Assembly (NCBI GenBank): GCA_053919585.1
Contig: CM132794.1
DNA: 64,000 nucleotides
Reading direction: 5' to 3' (one strand)
Source: Euprymna scolopes
Taxonomy: Eukaryota
Part shown: positions 1,170 through 35,521 of the stretch, in pieces
How positions within the stretch are numbered: position 1 is the stretch's first letter
How the letters are laid out: each line of letters begins with the position of its first letter
The notes under the pieces: model-generated
The model's database searches: none
Told to the model about the DNA's origin: nothing
Seen by the model: only the letters and a program-made list of their open reading frames with translations
Translations under genes and position numbers: made by a program

Positions 1170-1700
1170 CGAAGAAGGAAAATCGGTGCATAGCAAGGAA
1201 AGGATCGTCATCAAATACCCTCTCCCAGACAGAGACAGAATACTCTTCCTACCGCTGCAGATGAAGCATTATCAAGCAGTTCACCAAGCCTATAGACAAG
1301 GATGGTGACTGTTTCGCTAGGAATTCCCATAATTGATCAAAGACAAGTGCAACGCTGGCAACTTCAACGGTCCTTAGATGCGGCAGCTCATCAGAAATCA
1401 TTGAACGAAGTGGATTTGTTAGCGTGAAAGATATTTAATCTAGTATTGAATAACTTTCCGTTCAATTCTAAGCCCAGAAACTACGGAGAACTTGTAAAGA
1501 ACATGATTTCTGCTTTCAGAAATCTGGGCTGTAACAAAAATGTCTACATGCACTTCCTGTTTTCATAAACGAACCGGCTTCATGAGAACTTGGCTTCAAT
1601 GACTGATGTTCAGGACTAGACAAAAGATGGAAACCACGTATCGGGGTAACTAAGATGTAATGCTGATAGCTGACTCTTATTGGAATCTTAACAGTGGTCC
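1170..1700 (+). mobile_element. DNA transposase relic, Chapaev3 (CMC)-type
   Basis: Frameshifted translation ILFLPLQMK/IKQFTKA, FNGP*MRQLI, NYGELVKNMISAFRNLGCNKNVYMHFLF matches the PPLHIKLGLMKQFVKAL / FxGPQIRxL / LGCNMSxKxHxL motif series. Confidence 0.6.
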
Positions 1701-3000: not shown

Positions 3001-4807
3001 TCTTACAGCTCCTGTTGATATTTTTCCACGCGTTAAACGTACTCTGTTTCAACTTAATTACAATCACAAATCTAAGAAATCTAAGAAATATTATATCTTA
3101 AACTGGTAAATAATCGATTTTTTTATTAAACATGTACCTTAACCTTGGCCATCTTGGTCTTCTTAAAAATATGTTCCACTGAAATTGCCGAATCAAATTC
3201 ATCGAACCAATTCTATATGATAAACATTCAAATTGATTTTTCTTCTGACAAGAACTTGTAAAAACACTATCAGAGTTATTTCATTATATTTTATTTATTA
3301 AAAGAAGAAAAGGAGAGTTTTCCTAGTGTAATAATGTTTCGAAATAAATTGTAAATAAACAATGTGTAATTAGGCGTGGTGCGTTTCTCTCAATAGAAAG
3401 CATTTCGCGTTGTGCATGCAACGACAAAACCCTAAATCGGTGTGCGTTCGTATTAGTCCCTTGTGAACGATGAAACGTCGGTGTAAATGGGGAAAAGGGA
3501 AAGGAGGAATTAAATAGAGATAAAAGATTTTACAACTTCCATTGATTCTTACACGTTTTTGCAGCGACTATCACTTGAAAAAATATAGGAGTGTACGATT
3601 ATTGAGCAAGTGTGGAGGTAATAGACATGTAGCACACCTTAAATAATGGGCTGCAGTTTGTTAAAGCATGTTACAGATTCTGAATATGTTTTCTAAATTA
3701 AGTGCGTTTCAATTATTTTCCAGTTCAAACGGTCGCCTGGTGTTGATTTCTACGCGGTTTCATTTATTTCGTGGCATCTTAATGTTTATTTATTAAAAAA
3801 ACAAAAAAAAATAAACCTGAAAATCCTGAAATTCTTGTTGCTCACATTATACATAAATACTTAGTTTTAAATCGAGTCTAAATATCTTCGTTTATAATGC
3901 TGGATATATGTATATGATTATTTTTATTCGGTCTGTTGCAAATTACATCATGCACTCCATATTTATTACATTGGGCAATATTTACATTATGGGTTTGCTT
4001 TCAGCATTGCCCTCCTATCCATTTTATATAATGGTTATAATAAAATACTGGTAAAGGAAAATTTAACTTAAATATGATCATATTACTTATGTATGTTGTT
4101 TTCAACTGTCTATCTATTCTAGCTTTTCTTGTTATTATAATTACTGTTTCATCTATAGTGCAAGTAATTCTATGTCGAACTGGCATATCAATAAAAGTAA
4201 ATTTCCACGTTAGAATACGTGACACATATGTCCTATAGTGAATCTAACGATCATCTATCTACATTTATGATTTTTATATATTTCAAATATCTATACCCAG
4301 GCATTGCTTATCAACGTCCTTTATTTCATATTGTTCAGTTTTGTATGTGTACATTTTCAGGTTACTTTATAGTGTTACTTTATTAGATCTACCAGTATAA
4401 TATAATGCTTGCTGTTTCTTGAACTTGTCAAGTATATTTTTTTTTATATTATTATTCTTATGTTATCATATAAATAGTGTTTTATTATCATTGAGCGTAA
4501 ATATTTTTTTATTTGCGAGCGTCATTTATCATATCGACCGAAAATATATCTTTTTTTTATGGATACGAATATGCCCGTTCATTTCTGTCGTTTCTATAAT
4601 CCATATCGATCTACAAAGATTTACAGTAAAAATAAATGTACTAATCTGCTAAGTACAAGGATATAACGAATACCGAATACAATATTCATTTTAGTCGATT
4701 CTTTTAGAAACTTACTGGAAAAAACGTTACATTTCTTGCTAGTTTAACGATAGTAATATTTTTTCAATATTATTATATGCACGCCTTAGAAATTATCTGT
4801 AAGACAT

Positions 4808-4808
<1 letters not shown>

Positions 4809-4879
<71 letters not shown>

Positions 4880-4900
4880 AGTCATATATATATATATATG
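4809..4900. repeat. (CA)n-(TA)n compound microsatellite
   Basis: Directly visible. One of roughly 30 (TA)n tracts in the window. Confidence 0.95.
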
Positions 4901-5035
4901 TAGTCATCGACAAACAGTCCTGTTTCGTTGCATCACAACTCATTAGTGACGCTAGACAATCACCAAGCCAAAGATTGAACCGAGAACAATCGAGTTGAAA
5001 GTCAGTAGTTTACCAATCGACCCACGGAACCGGCG
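4900..5035 (-). mobile_element. tRNA-derived SINE-like element with a degenerate hammerhead ribozyme
   Basis: Minus strand: A-box TGGGTCGATTGG (5024-5013), CT-TTC-AA anticodon-like loop, B-box GGTTCAATC (4981-4973), then CTAATGA-GTTG tgatg CAAC-GAAA-CAGG..TTTG-TC (4950-4903), ending in (TA)n. Confidence 0.6.
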
Positions 5036-32801: not shown

Positions 32802-33405
32802 TATAAGTTTTTAATCAATTTCTTTCCTCTTCTTACAAGGAATAAGCCTACACTTTTCCCGTGAAATTCCAGCAGAATAATTTGTTAAGTATTGTTTTAT
32901 GGCTTCCTTTGAAGGCCTTTAAAATATCCCCTTGGGTTGTCTGTCCGATATTTAACCGTCTTTTATTTGGAAATATAGTTCGTTATTTCATCTCGTTACA
33001 TCTCGAGTGCACTTCCTCGGGGTCAGCAATTGTTCTTCTCTTTCCTCTTTACATTTGATCGAGAAATTTAATTACTTTCTAGGATAGTATATTTGATAAA
33101 GACGACATCAATGACCAGGTTTATCTCTCGAGGGGAATGTATTATGTACATTATCTCAGTTAGATGGTTTCTCCAGTGCCGAATGTGAAACCTAACAATC
33201 AAAATTTACTTTATTTTTTGTATTATTCGTTTCTAAACTTGATTGAAATATCGTATGTTAAAAGTTTAACCTCTAATATCATTCGAATGAAATGTGATTT
33301 AATTAAGAAATATGACTCAAGTTTTATCTTTCTATTAATGATAAGAATATTTTAAATACTTTTATTCATAAATAGTATTTTTTCAAATAATTTTCGTCAT
33401 ATATA

Positions 33406-33460
<55 letters not shown>

Positions 33461-33488
33461 TTATTTTTTTTACTATAATAATTAAATA

Positions 33489-33534
33489 CCTACAGACACT
33501 AGTGTTTCATCCTTTCGGGATTCTTCAGTGCAGG
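33489..33534 (-). ncRNA. Type I hammerhead ribozyme (copy 1)
   Basis: CCUGCA-CUGAAGA-AUCC cgaaa GGAU-GAAA-CACUAGUG-UC^UGUAGG: intact core, 6-bp stem I (one G-U), 4-bp stem II, palindromic stem III, GUC cleavage triplet (cut between 33495 and 33494). Confidence 0.9.
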
Positions 33535-33836
33535 GTGTCACGATTACTACCAGTCGAACGATTCGAACCCCGCGACACGAGACATCTCTGGCTCGATTAG
33601 CGGAGGCCGTATCCATTCGGCTACTATTAACCGTGTGAAATAGCGTTGAATTTTAAACATTTTTTTAATTTAAATGTTCATTACGTCAGACAGACAGTGA
33701 TCAAATCGCTATACGATGATCTACGCATAAGAGATAAATTGACCGACTTTTTAATTCAACTGAAAGTACTCAACGATAAGAAACGAATTTCTTAAAGGGG
33801 CTGTCATAATTATTTTTTTACTATAATAATTAAATA

Positions 33837-33882
33837 CCTACAGACACTAGTGTTTCATCCTTTCGGGATTCTTCAGTGCAGG
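33837..33882 (-). ncRNA. Type I hammerhead ribozyme (copy 2)
   Basis: Identical to copy 1, 348 nt away. Confidence 0.9.
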
Positions 33883-33911
33883 GTGTCACGATTACTACCT
33901 GCACGGTTGAT

Positions 33912-35521
33912 CCATTTATGTGAGTTTTCATTTATGTGAGTTTTTCATTTACGTGAGATAATCATTTATGTATGTTTTTCATTTATTTCAGTTTTCATGC
34001 ATGTGAGGTTTTTTTTTTACTCAGTGATCACCACTTATCAAGGCCCGGAAGCCACTCAGGGATAAGGGTTATTGCAAGTACATTACGTTAGTGAGGAGAT
34101 TTGATGAAGTGTTTAATTAGGGGGGAGGTTCATTAGGAATTTGTTAACATTAGACTTGAAGACATCCAAGTTGTAGTCCGGAGGGAAGCAGGCAGACGGA
34201 ACAGAGTTCCACATGCGTGCAGTTCTAAGAAAGAAGATTTGTTCATGAAATCCGCGTTTTGATTTAGGCACAGATATAGAGTGGGGGACATTTTTCACAT
34301 TGGATTCAGCTAGACGGGTGTTTTTCGTGAAAGATTGGCGAGGGGGGGGGCCAGGAATTAGAGTTCAGACGAGCACCTGCCATGAAAATAACGATAAAAC
34401 AAGGATAGGCTTGCAACGTCTCTTCTGTGGGAGAGGGGTTGCAGGGTAGAGAATAGGGCATCCCCCACTAAACCACGAAGTCTATTTTGTACTCTGTCAA
34501 GGCATGATAGGCTGTTTTTTGCAGCTCCTGCCCAGATATGGCAACAGTATTCCATCCTTGGACGTTCTTGGCTTTTATATGGATAGAGAATTGCATCAGT
34601 AGTGAGATATCTTCTGGAGCGGTAGAAGGATCCCACCATCTTTCCAGCGACCTTGGCAACAGACTTGATGTACGTGTTCCATTTCAGATCAGGAGTAAAG
34701 GTCAAAACCAGAAGCTTGTCAAAACACGGGGCCTCACCCAGACGAGAGCCATCCATCACAATTGATACCAGCTGGGGATCAGAGCGTTGATGATGATTTT
34801 CATGAGTTTTCATTTATGTCAGTTTTCATTTATGTTAGATGTTAGTTTATATGAGTTTTCATTTATGTGAGTTTTCGTTTATGTGAGTTTTCGTTTATGT
34901 GAGTTTTTGTTTATGTGAGTTTTCCATTTATGTGCAATTTTCATTTAGTTGAGTGATCATTTATTTGAGATTTTCATTCATGAGTGTTTTCATTTATATG
35001 AGTTTTCCATTTATACGAGTATTCATTGATGTGAGGTTTTATTTATGTGAGTTTTTCATTTATGTGAGTTTTCTGTTTTTGTGAGTTTTCATTCGTGCGA
35101 GTTTTTCATTGATGTGAGTTTTTCATTCATGTGAGTTTTTCATTGATGTGAGTTTTTCATTTATCTGAGATTTTCATTAATGTTACTTTACATTTATGTG
35201 ATATTTTCATTTATGTGAGATTTTCATCTATGAGAGTTTTCAAGTTATGTGAGTTTTCATTTATGTGAGTTTTTTTTTATTCATGTGAGTTTTCATATAT
35301 GTCAGTATTTCATTTATGCGAGTTTTTTTCATTTATGTGAGATTTTCATTTATTTGAGTTTTCATTGATATGAGTTGTCCATATATGTGAGTTTTCATTT
35401 ATGTGGGTTTTTACTTTTACGTGAGATTATCATTTATGTGAGTTTTCCATTTATTTTAGTTTTCAATTTATGTGACATTTTCATTTATGTGAGGTTTCCA
35501 TTTATGTGAGATTTTCATTTA
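33912..35521. repeat. Minisatellite, 16-17-bp unit TTTTCATTTATGTGAG, interrupted by a LINE
   Basis: Dozens of degenerate tandem copies at about 33912-34008 and 34797-35521. Confidence 0.9.
34009..34797 (-). mobile_element. CR1-group (Crack/Daphne-like) LINE: RT C-terminus, 3' UTR and poly(A)
   Basis: ORF 34358-34813 reads RPRMEYCCHIWAGA..LDRVQ..LQPLSHRRDVASLSLFYRYFHGRCSSEL; then FFLRTARMWNS. T-run at 34009-34018 is the poly(A). Confidence 0.9.

What the first reader, a model, noticed from the sequence alone, without database searches (positions are those of the whole stretch)
33461..33899. Pol III-driven, double-hammerhead retrozyme-like element defining an exact 348-nt RNA unit
Seen: two identical consensus type I hammerheads (33489-33534 and 33837-33882, minus strand) inside ~90-bp direct repeats 348 nt apart. 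A tRNA-like A-box/B-box pair sits just upstream of the downstream HHR. The minus strand has no run of 4 or more T in the whole 439 nt, while the opposite strand has several, in very AT-rich DNA. Known: animal non-LTR retrozymes are short tandem units with type I HHRs that yield self-cleaved and circular RNAs; palindromic stem III is typical of PLE-associated HHRs acting as dimers; TTTT terminates Pol III; Schistosoma SM-alpha is a precedent for a tRNA-like promoter combined with an HHR. Inference: a young non-coding retroelement whose multimeric transcripts are cut to 348-nt monomers, possibly circularised and reinserted by a PLE RT. The 1.26-unit length would fit reverse transcription running more than once around a circle.
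Basis: partly seen in the sequence, partly recalled or inferred. Interest (0 to 1): 0.88.

Follow-up and report, generated by a model that had tools for sequence, protein, structure and literature searches.

The report
Hammerhead-ribozyme retroelement copy in (TA)n microsatellite
This is a young, 1.27-unit copy of a very abundant non-coding mobile element of a mollusc genome, built from a 348-nt unit with tRNA-gene-like promoter boxes and a self-cleaving hammerhead motif and copied through RNA into (TA)n microsatellites. It is a further example of a known kind (animal retrozymes, schistosome Sm-alpha), not a new system.

Summary
Two identical type I hammerheads lie on the minus strand inside perfect 87-nt direct repeats 348 nt apart, with an A-box/B-box pair between them. 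The hammerheads score 25.6 bits, below Rfam's gathering score of 34. The lack of TTTT is not significant (p about 0.1).

The element belongs to a dispersed family. The hammerhead 34-mer has 12,004 exact genomic matches, against 0 for the reversed control. In a position-ordered sample of 26 insertions:
- the 3' end is fixed in 23;
- 5' ends vary continuously (0.28-2.67 units);
- (TA)n flanks 24 at the 3' side and 20 at the 5' side.

A roughly 33-unit tandem array also exists. This is the signature of target-primed reverse transcription. Because the fixed 3' junction lies about 37 nt past the cleavage site, the template was circular or uncleaved, not the cut linear monomer. An abundant, intact Penelope-like element in the same genome also inserts into (TA)n, but the sampled family shares no sequence with the unit.

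Not supported:
- Pol III transcription is not shown.
- In this copy the promoter boxes lie between the two ribozymes, so this locus cannot make the 348-nt unit from them.
- Poly(A)/oligo-dT reads show no cut ends and no joints.

This scan had already found the same family elsewhere in this genome (s1-295478). Verdict: new member of a known kind.

The parts
33457..33899 (-). Whole insertion, about 1.27 units of the 348-nt family unit
   Evidence: The 5' end is at unit position 262. The 3' end is at the family's fixed end (A-run plus TAAGTAT) next to (TA)n.
33813..33899 (-). Upstream copy of the 87-nt direct repeat (partial 5' unit: linker, hammerhead 1, AT-rich tail)
   Evidence: 100% identical to 33465-33551.
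33837..33882 (-). Hammerhead 1, type I. Helix I 6 bp, helix II 4 bp, short palindromic helix III. Predicted cut between 33843 and 33842.
33631..33812 (-). Body of the unit (unit 1-182), AT-rich, non-coding. This is the least conserved part between subfamilies.
   Evidence: no ORF of 150 aa or more here.
33546..33630 (-). tRNA-like segment (unit 183-267) with A box 33623-33613 and B box 33569-33560. It folds as a long imperfect hairpin.
   Evidence: The boxes are nearly invariant across subfamilies, and 5 pairs are kept through changes on both sides.
33465..33551 (-). Downstream copy of the 87-nt direct repeat (linker, hammerhead 2, AT-rich tail)
33489..33534 (-). Hammerhead 2, identical to hammerhead 1. 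Predicted cut between 33495 and 33494.
33457..33488 (-). AT-rich tail and fixed 3' junction of the family, about 37 nt downstream of the cleavage site
   Evidence: same end in about 23 of 26 unbiased copies.
33399..33456 (.). (TA)n microsatellite at the 3' flank, the family's insertion target
   Evidence: (TA)n at the 3' flank in 24 of 26 copies and at the 5' flank in 20 of 26.

Best explanation
The stretch is one insertion of a high-copy, non-autonomous retroelement of the animal non-LTR retrozyme / schistosome Sm-alpha type. Its 348-nt unit consists of an AT-rich body, a degenerate tRNA-derived segment with Pol III-type A and B boxes, a canonical metazoan type I hammerhead that should be active only when two copies pair, and an AT-rich tail. 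Shown: the family is spread through the genome by a polar copying process that always ends at the same 3' nucleotides, stops at variable 5' positions, often runs on for more than one unit, and lands in (TA)n microsatellites. Inferred: source loci with two or more units (tandem arrays exist) are transcribed, possibly by Pol III from the internal boxes. Paired hammerheads cut the multimer into 348-nt monomers, and a host RNA ligase circularises them. A Penelope-like element's GIY-YIG endonuclease and reverse transcriptase nick a (TA)n tract and prime cDNA synthesis on the AU-rich tail of the circle (or of an uncleaved multimer). They copy it for a fraction of a lap up to several laps, leaving copies of 0.3 to 2.7 units. 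The window copy (1.27 units) is such a product. Its own A/B boxes sit downstream of ribozyme 1, so it is probably a dead-end copy and not a source of the 348-nt RNA.
For: Anatomy. Copy number: 12,004 exact matches to the hammerhead 34-mer against 0 for the reversed control, and at least 1,005 first-look candidates for the unit. Polar copying: fixed 3' end and variable 5' end. In an unbiased sample of 26 insertions, lengths were 97-923 nt, 10 exceeded one unit, and (TA)n flanked 24 at the 3' side and 20 at the 5' side. The 3' junction lies about 37 nt past the GUC cleavage site and every copy is continuous across that site, so the template was not the cut linear monomer. Source candidates: a tandem array of about 33 units on C4 and dimers or trimers elsewhere. 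Youth: mean pairwise distance 2.3%, window copy 0.6-1.8% from relatives, its two repeats identical. Dimeric ribozyme: the monomer hammerhead fold is -6.3 against an alternative fold of -8.0 kcal/mol, and the homodimer minimum of -29.4 is the double hammerhead with a 10-bp helix III. This design is described for metazoan type I hammerheads (PMC4209133). Constraint: linker, hammerhead and tail are 94-98% conserved between subfamilies, against 86% for the tRNA-like part and 77-79% for the body; the A and B boxes are nearly invariant and the hairpin shows compensatory changes. Partner: at least 15,395 GIY-YIG candidates, many in frames of about 806 aa; this PLE ends in (TA)n in 5 of 5 copies and forms inverted plus partial-tandem insertions. 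PLE 5' truncation, partial tandems and (TA)n bias are documented (PMC8557442).
Against: No RNA evidence for the pathway. In three raw-read poly(A)/oligo-dT RNA runs and one RNA contig set, both strands are covered about equally, 59-88% of reads run on into unrelated sequence, no ends pile up at 33495|33494 or 33843|33842, and there are no joints. The unit shares no detectable sequence with the sampled PLE family, and those 20 PLE loci (mostly one family) have no Rfam-detectable hammerhead. The hammerhead scores below Rfam's gathering threshold. The tRNA-like part is not recognised by ARAGORN at default or by Rfam. The absence of TTTT is not significant. Copy 5' ends are not enriched at the cleavage site (2 of 26, p 0.23), so nothing marks a ribozyme-cut end. 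Circle and uncleaved multimer cannot be told apart from DNA.
Confidence: 0.7

Rival explanations
1. Same retroelement, but the ribozyme and A/B boxes are relics or irrelevant to mobility. Uncleaved linear multimers, made by read-through Pol II transcription of tandem arrays, are the templates, and no circular RNA or Pol III is involved.
For: RNA reads show both strands, embedding in longer transcripts and no cleavage ends. The variants seen in reads mirror genomic abundance. The review literature holds that metazoan retrozymes have no promoter and depend on read-through (PMC7761336). Arrays long enough to give multimers exist.
Against: The hammerhead, its linker and the boxes are the best conserved parts between subfamilies, while the body drifts. 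The hammerhead is perfect in 12,004 copies. An A/B pair at proper spacing is unlikely by chance. The libraries used select against small non-polyadenylated RNA.
Confidence: 0.2
2. A classical tRNA-derived SINE mobilised by a LINE, with (TA)n as the SINE's own 3' tail and not as a target.
For: A and B boxes. An A-run near the 3' end. The window copy abuts the 3' tail of a LINE-like element.
Against: The tRNA-like part is not at the 5' end of copies: 5' ends fall anywhere in the unit and 10 of 26 copies exceed one unit. (TA)n lies on both sides in 20 of 26 copies. Tandem arrays and partial tandems are PLE-style features. The adjacent LINE's 16-nt tail repeat has no resemblance to the unit's tail.
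Confidence: 0.07
3. A satellite DNA or DNA-level mobile element (circular DNA reintegration, or Helitron-like rolling circle inserting at A|T) that merely carries ribozyme-like motifs.
For: Tandem arrays of 345-nt units. Insertion in AT dinucleotide repeats would suit a Helitron.
Against: One end is invariant and the other truncated at random positions of the unit, the polarity expected of reverse transcription from a fixed priming site. The fixed end does not begin with the TC of Helitrons, and no CTRR end with a hairpin is present (by eye). There are thousands of dispersed short copies.
Confidence: 0.03

Closest known systems
Animal non-LTR retrozymes (Cervera and de la Pena 2020, PMC7229834; review PMC7761336; Li, Clavereau and Pollet 2026 preprint, 10.64898/2026.07.22.740005)
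   Same: Non-coding units of 170-400 nt with a type I hammerhead, low GC (37.6% here), present as monomers, dimers and arrays. Mobilisation through circular RNA and a PLE reverse transcriptase has been proposed for them. The weak palindromic helix III implies dimeric cleavage, as in the amphibian examples.
   Different: The review states that metazoan retrozymes show no promoter and no motif pointing to their partner. This family has conserved Pol III-type A and B boxes inside the unit and a strict (TA)n target shared with a resident PLE. No circular RNA has been shown here.
Schistosome Sm-alpha / Sj-alpha SINE-like elements with hammerhead (Ferbeyre et al. 1998, cited in PMC2770079)
   Same: A unit of about 330-350 nt that combines a tRNA-derived part with a type I hammerhead, is very high in copy number, and is both tandem and dispersed. 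(Unit size and tandem arrangement of Sm-alpha are from my own recollection of Ferbeyre et al.; that paper could not be opened.)
   Different: Different phylum (mollusc against flatworm), and sequence relatedness was not tested. Here the tRNA-like part is too degenerate for tRNA finders, whereas Sm-alpha relatives are called tRNA-Gln by tRNAscan. (TA)n targeting and run-on copies were documented here.
Penelope-like elements and their pLTR hammerheads (PMC4209133, PMC8557442)
   Same: 5' truncation, partial tandems, microsatellite (TA)n bias, and hammerheads designed to act as dimers.
   Different: No ORF. No sequence similarity to the sampled 806-aa PLE family of this genome. That family's pLTR carries only a non-canonical hammerhead-like core (CUUGAAGA ... 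GAAAC) that Rfam does not detect.

Membership tests
Hammerhead ribozyme type I (Rfam RF00163) | Conserved core CUGANGA ... GAAA ... UH with helices I, II and III in type I topology | tested here: met
   alignment over model positions 1-45 with no non-standard pairs; core pattern found only at the two sites.
Hammerhead ribozyme type I (Rfam RF00163) | Score at or above the curated gathering threshold (34 bits) | tested here: not met
   25.6 bits. The shortfall comes from the A-U-rich helix II and the 2-nt insert in helix III, not from core mismatches.
Hammerhead ribozyme type I (Rfam RF00163) | Self-cleavage after H17 | not testable with these tools
   Needs in vitro transcription. RNA reads show no ends at the site, but the libraries are poly(A)-selected.
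Animal non-LTR retrozyme | Short (170-400 nt) non-coding tandem units, each with a type I hammerhead, and low GC | tested here: met
   (dimers, trimers, an array of about 33 units). GC 37.6%. No ORF of 150 aa or more.
Animal non-LTR retrozyme | Expressed as unit-length linear and circular RNA | tested here: inconclusive
   present in RNA libraries of several studies, but on both strands, inside longer transcripts, and without ends or joints. The library type is unsuitable.
tRNA-derived SINE (Sm-alpha type) | Internal Pol III promoter: A box and B box at tRNA-like spacing | tested here: met
   one match in the window against 0.015 expected; the boxes are nearly invariant across subfamilies.
tRNA-derived SINE (Sm-alpha type) | Recognisable tRNA cloverleaf or similarity to a tRNA | tested here: inconclusive
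   ARAGORN at default finds none. Rfam tRNA gives no hit at E<=10. There is a sub-threshold class-II-like cloverleaf at 80% threshold. Real tRNAs of this genome could not be fetched for comparison.
tRNA-derived SINE (Sm-alpha type) | Copies begin at the Pol III start, with the head at the 5' end | tested here: not met
   5' ends are scattered over the unit, and the tRNA-like part is internal.
PLE-dependent non-autonomous element | PLE-style insertions: 5' truncation, partial tandems, and a microsatellite target shared with a resident PLE | tested here: met
   (element). (PLE with (TA)n at both ends, a pLTR and an inverted copy). Literature.
PLE-dependent non-autonomous element | Sequence similarity to the pLTR or 3' end of the partner PLE | tested here: not met
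   no blastn hit to the PLE 3' regions; no hammerhead in 20 PLE loci. These loci are mostly one PLE family, and others remain unexamined.

The most novel reading that the evidence does not exclude
This family would be the first animal retrozyme shown to carry its own Pol III promoter inside the circle-forming unit and to have an identifiable partner and target. Arrays would be Pol III-transcribed, paired hammerheads would release 348-nt RNAs that are circularised, and a (TA)n-specific Penelope-like enzyme would copy the circle by rolling-circle reverse transcription, which would explain the copies of up to 2.7 units. It would make the retrozyme-PLE link directly testable.
Probability: 0.3. Interest if true: 0.6.

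Novelty: new member of a known kind. Interest (0 to 1): 0.4.

Why it matters
Two questions about animal retrozymes remain open: how they are transcribed and which element moves them. The 2020 review says they show no promoter and no motif that identifies a partner. This family gives concrete handles on both: conserved Pol III-type boxes inside the unit, and a strict (TA)n target shared with an abundant, intact Penelope-like element. The fixed 3' junction beyond the cleavage site, together with copies longer than one unit, is genomic evidence that the template crosses the ribozyme site, as a circle would. With more than 12,000 intact ribozyme copies and very young insertions, the species would be a good system for testing retrozyme mobilisation. 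The element itself is an ordinary repeat of this genome.

Tried and rejected
- **Rfam at gathering level on the whole window:** nothing. The hammerheads appear only with the E-value threshold.
- **ARAGORN default and Rfam tRNA on the tRNA-like part:** nothing.
- **TTTT absence as a Pol III argument:** rejected as weak, because 8-13% of shuffled or simulated units also lack TTTT.
- **Genome search with the 3'-terminal 120 nt:** returned nothing because the tool skips very common words. I replaced it with an exact-pattern search.
- **Sequence link between the unit and the PLE:** blastn with short words gave only one 31-nt chance-level hit. Rfam on 20 PLE loci gave only (TA)n-driven microRNA false positives and no hammerhead.
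- **'Footprint of ribozyme-cut RNA' (lead from s1-244832):** 5' ends of copies are not enriched at the cleavage site (2 of 26, p 0.23).
- **A 43-read RNA 5' end at 33618:** rejected as an artefact. The Drop-seq-type template-switch oligo ends in GAATGGG and the element has GAATGG there (my reading).
- **My relaxed regex scan for other hammerheads:** mis-assigned helix III and found nothing, so it was discarded.
- **Ferbeyre et al. 1998:** could not be opened.
- **Helitron reading and pLTR-plus-SINE reading:** considered and rejected; see the rival explanations.

Full report
**1. What is in the sequence**

On the minus strand, 33899 to about 33457 reads: a partial unit (linker, hammerhead 1, AT-rich tail), a 182-nt AT-rich body, an 85-nt tRNA-like segment, then again linker, hammerhead 2 and tail, followed by (TA)n.

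- The two 87-nt stretches, 33813-33899 and 33465-33551, are 100% identical and 348 nt apart.
- Rfam's type I hammerhead model matches 33837-33882 and 33489-33534 over its whole length with no non-standard pair, at 25.6 bits and E 8e-4.
- That score is under the curated 34 bits, so the gathering-level scan of the window is empty.
- The core pattern occurs nowhere else in the 64 kb (0.02 expected).
- The minus strand has no TTTT, but 8-13% of shuffled or simulated units lack it too.
- tRNA finders do not call the segment. A class-II-like cloverleaf appears only at a relaxed ARAGORN threshold.

**2. It is one copy of a very large family**

The window lies in a 5.9-Gb assembly. Labels of the RNA runs that hold the unit point to a mollusc.

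- The 348-nt unit has at least 1,005 first-look candidates. The 40 that were scored are 93-100% identical.
- The hammerhead 34-mer, with two free positions, has 12,004 exact matches against 0 for the reversed control.
- All of the first 30 matches along contig C1, a sample not biased by similarity to the window, have the same architecture: body, tRNA-like part, hammerhead, tail. They include older subfamilies at 77-92% identity.

**3. How copies are built**

In both samples the 3' end is constant: A-run, TAATTAT, then (TA)n. The 5' end falls anywhere in the unit. Among 26 independent insertions:

- lengths run from 97 to 923 nt (0.28-2.67 units), and 10 exceed one unit;
- (TA)n flanks 24 at the 3' side and 20 at the 5' side.

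There are also tandem dimers and trimers. An array of about 33 units on C4 itself ends at the canonical 3' end next to (TA)n.

A fixed 3' end with random 5' truncation is the polarity of target-primed reverse transcription.

The fixed junction lies about 37 nt downstream of the GUC cleavage site, and every copy is continuous across that site. The template therefore cannot have been the cut linear monomer, whose 3' end would be GUC. It was either a religated circle or an uncleaved multimer. That much follows from the DNA; which of the two it was cannot be decided from DNA.

**4. The ribozyme**

Helix I has 6 bp, helix II has 4 bp, and helix III is the palindrome ACACUAGUGU.

- As a monomer, the hammerhead-compatible fold (-6.3 kcal/mol) loses to an alternative fold (-8.0).
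- As a homodimer, the minimum-energy structure (-29.4) is the double hammerhead with a 10-bp helix III.

This is the canonical metazoan type I design, described as inactive alone and active when a second copy is near (PMC4209133). The two ribozymes of the window copy could pair in one transcript.

**5. Constraint**

- Between subfamilies, linker, hammerhead and tail stay 94-98% identical. The tRNA-like part is at 86% and the body at 77-79% (the body figures are lowered somewhat by truncated copies).
- Among 26 young copies, the 3' module has about half the per-site variation of the body.
- The A and B boxes are nearly invariant.
- RNAalifold folds the tRNA-like part into a long hairpin with five pairs kept through changes on both sides.

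This suggests selection on source copies for the ribozyme, the tail and the boxes. The sample was chosen by a perfect hammerhead core, so the hammerhead's own conservation there is circular.

**6. The likely mobiliser**

- The genome has at least 15,395 GIY-YIG candidates, many in open frames of about 806 aa.
- One such family has a reverse transcriptase followed by a C-terminal GIY-YIG domain, and a 570-nt 3' UTR that ends directly in (TA)n in five of five copies.
- A full insertion reads: (TA)n, inverted truncated copy, partial upstream copy, ORF, 3' UTR, (TA)n. This is the classic Penelope-like layout.
- 5' truncation, partial tandems and (TA)n bias are published PLE traits (PMC8557442).

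The shared target and shared insertion style are the argument for a PLE partner. Against it, the unit has no sequence similarity to this PLE's 3' region. That region carries only a non-canonical hammerhead-like core and no Rfam-detectable hammerhead. The 20 loci I sampled are mostly one PLE family.

**7. RNA**

RNA libraries from several studies hold the unit. I laid three raw-read runs (poly(A) or oligo-dT) and one contig set on the copy.

- Both strands are covered about equally.
- 59-88% of what was laid runs on into unrelated sequence.
- There are no pile-ups of ends at the cleavage sites and no joints.
- The commonest variants are those of the abundant older subfamilies (compare).

That is the picture of passive transcription of a repeat. 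However, these libraries select against small non-polyadenylated RNAs, so the result is no evidence against the pathway.

A 43-read 5' end at 33618 coincides with GAATGG, the 3' end of the template-switch oligo, and I read it as an artefact. Eight reads with a complete oligo place a 5' end at 33637, 14 nt upstream of the A box. That is where a Pol III start would be expected, but it is only a hint.

**8.

The retrozyme-like nature, the unit length, the youth, the run-on copies and a PLE-type mobilisation are supported. 'Pol III-driven' is not shown.

The geometry of this particular copy also argues against it being a source. The boxes lie between the two ribozymes, so a transcript started there contains only ribozyme 2. 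Only loci with at least two units upstream-to-downstream could release a full unit from the internal promoter.

**9. Comparison and novelty**

The closest known kinds are:
- animal non-LTR retrozymes (PMC7229834, PMC7761336, and the 2026 preprint that derives vertebrate retrozymes from PLE pLTRs);
- the schistosome Sm-alpha element, which likewise joins a tRNA-derived part to a type I hammerhead.

The review states that metazoan retrozymes show no promoter and no motif that reveals their partner. This family differs in having conserved A and B boxes and a strict (TA)n target shared with a resident PLE.

Earlier follow-ups of this scan reached the same reading for the same 345-nt family elsewhere in this genome (s1-295478). 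My analysis agrees and adds the argument from the 3' junction and the unbiased length distribution. I file it as a new member of a known kind, of moderate interest.

Noticed in passing
window 33900-34200 (minus strand): Directly upstream of the copy lie the end of a LINE-like ORF (ending ...FKSNVNKFLMNLPPN, stop near 34110) and a tail of roughly 16-nt tandem repeats (AAAACTCACATAAATG-like) at 33900-34020. A second block of the same repeat lies at 34796-34990. The neighbouring 151-aa ORF at 34358-34813 has no Pfam match.
   Followed up: partly
L081 = G000:C3:22985800-22992800 (reverse strand); also L037, L038, L044, L045, L050: [quoted passage not shown] Its pLTR holds a hammerhead-like motif with an extra U in the core (CUUGAAGA ... 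5-bp helix II ... GAAAC) that Rfam does not detect.
   Followed up: partly
L051 about 1390-1435 (+) and L062 (reverse strand), upstream of the central element: Other hammerhead families occur next to copies of this one. One has helix III palindrome CACGCGUG (L051, also L046). One sits just after a B-box-like GGTTTCAATCC (L062). So the pairing of a tRNA-like box with a hammerhead recurs in unrelated families of this genome.
   Followed up: no
G000:C4:40616800-40628200 (L083, L027-L029, L084): Tandem array of about 33 units with a 345-nt period, all in one orientation, ending at the canonical 3' end next to (TA)n. Matches spaced 1,724 nt apart suggest a five-unit higher-order repeat. The middle part could not be fetched.
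   Followed up: partly
G000:C11:1.68-2.16 Mb: A very large cluster of high-scoring tRNA genes, all on one strand. 61 of the 62 scored tRNA matches lie there, and the genome has about 506,000 rough tRNA-like first-look candidates.
   Followed up: no
Rfam gives no hammerhead hit at E<=0.1 in either; there are only (TA)n-driven microRNA false positives at 4770-4932.
   Followed up: partly
window 33613-33618 and 33637, run X23: Template-switch oligo sequence is joined to the element at GAATGG (43 reads, likely strand invasion). Eight reads with a complete oligo join at 33637, 14 nt upstream of the A box, a possible true RNA 5' end.
   Followed up: no
window, whole: The window contains 1,118 N (masked or gap), outside the finding. 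I left them untouched.
   Followed up: no
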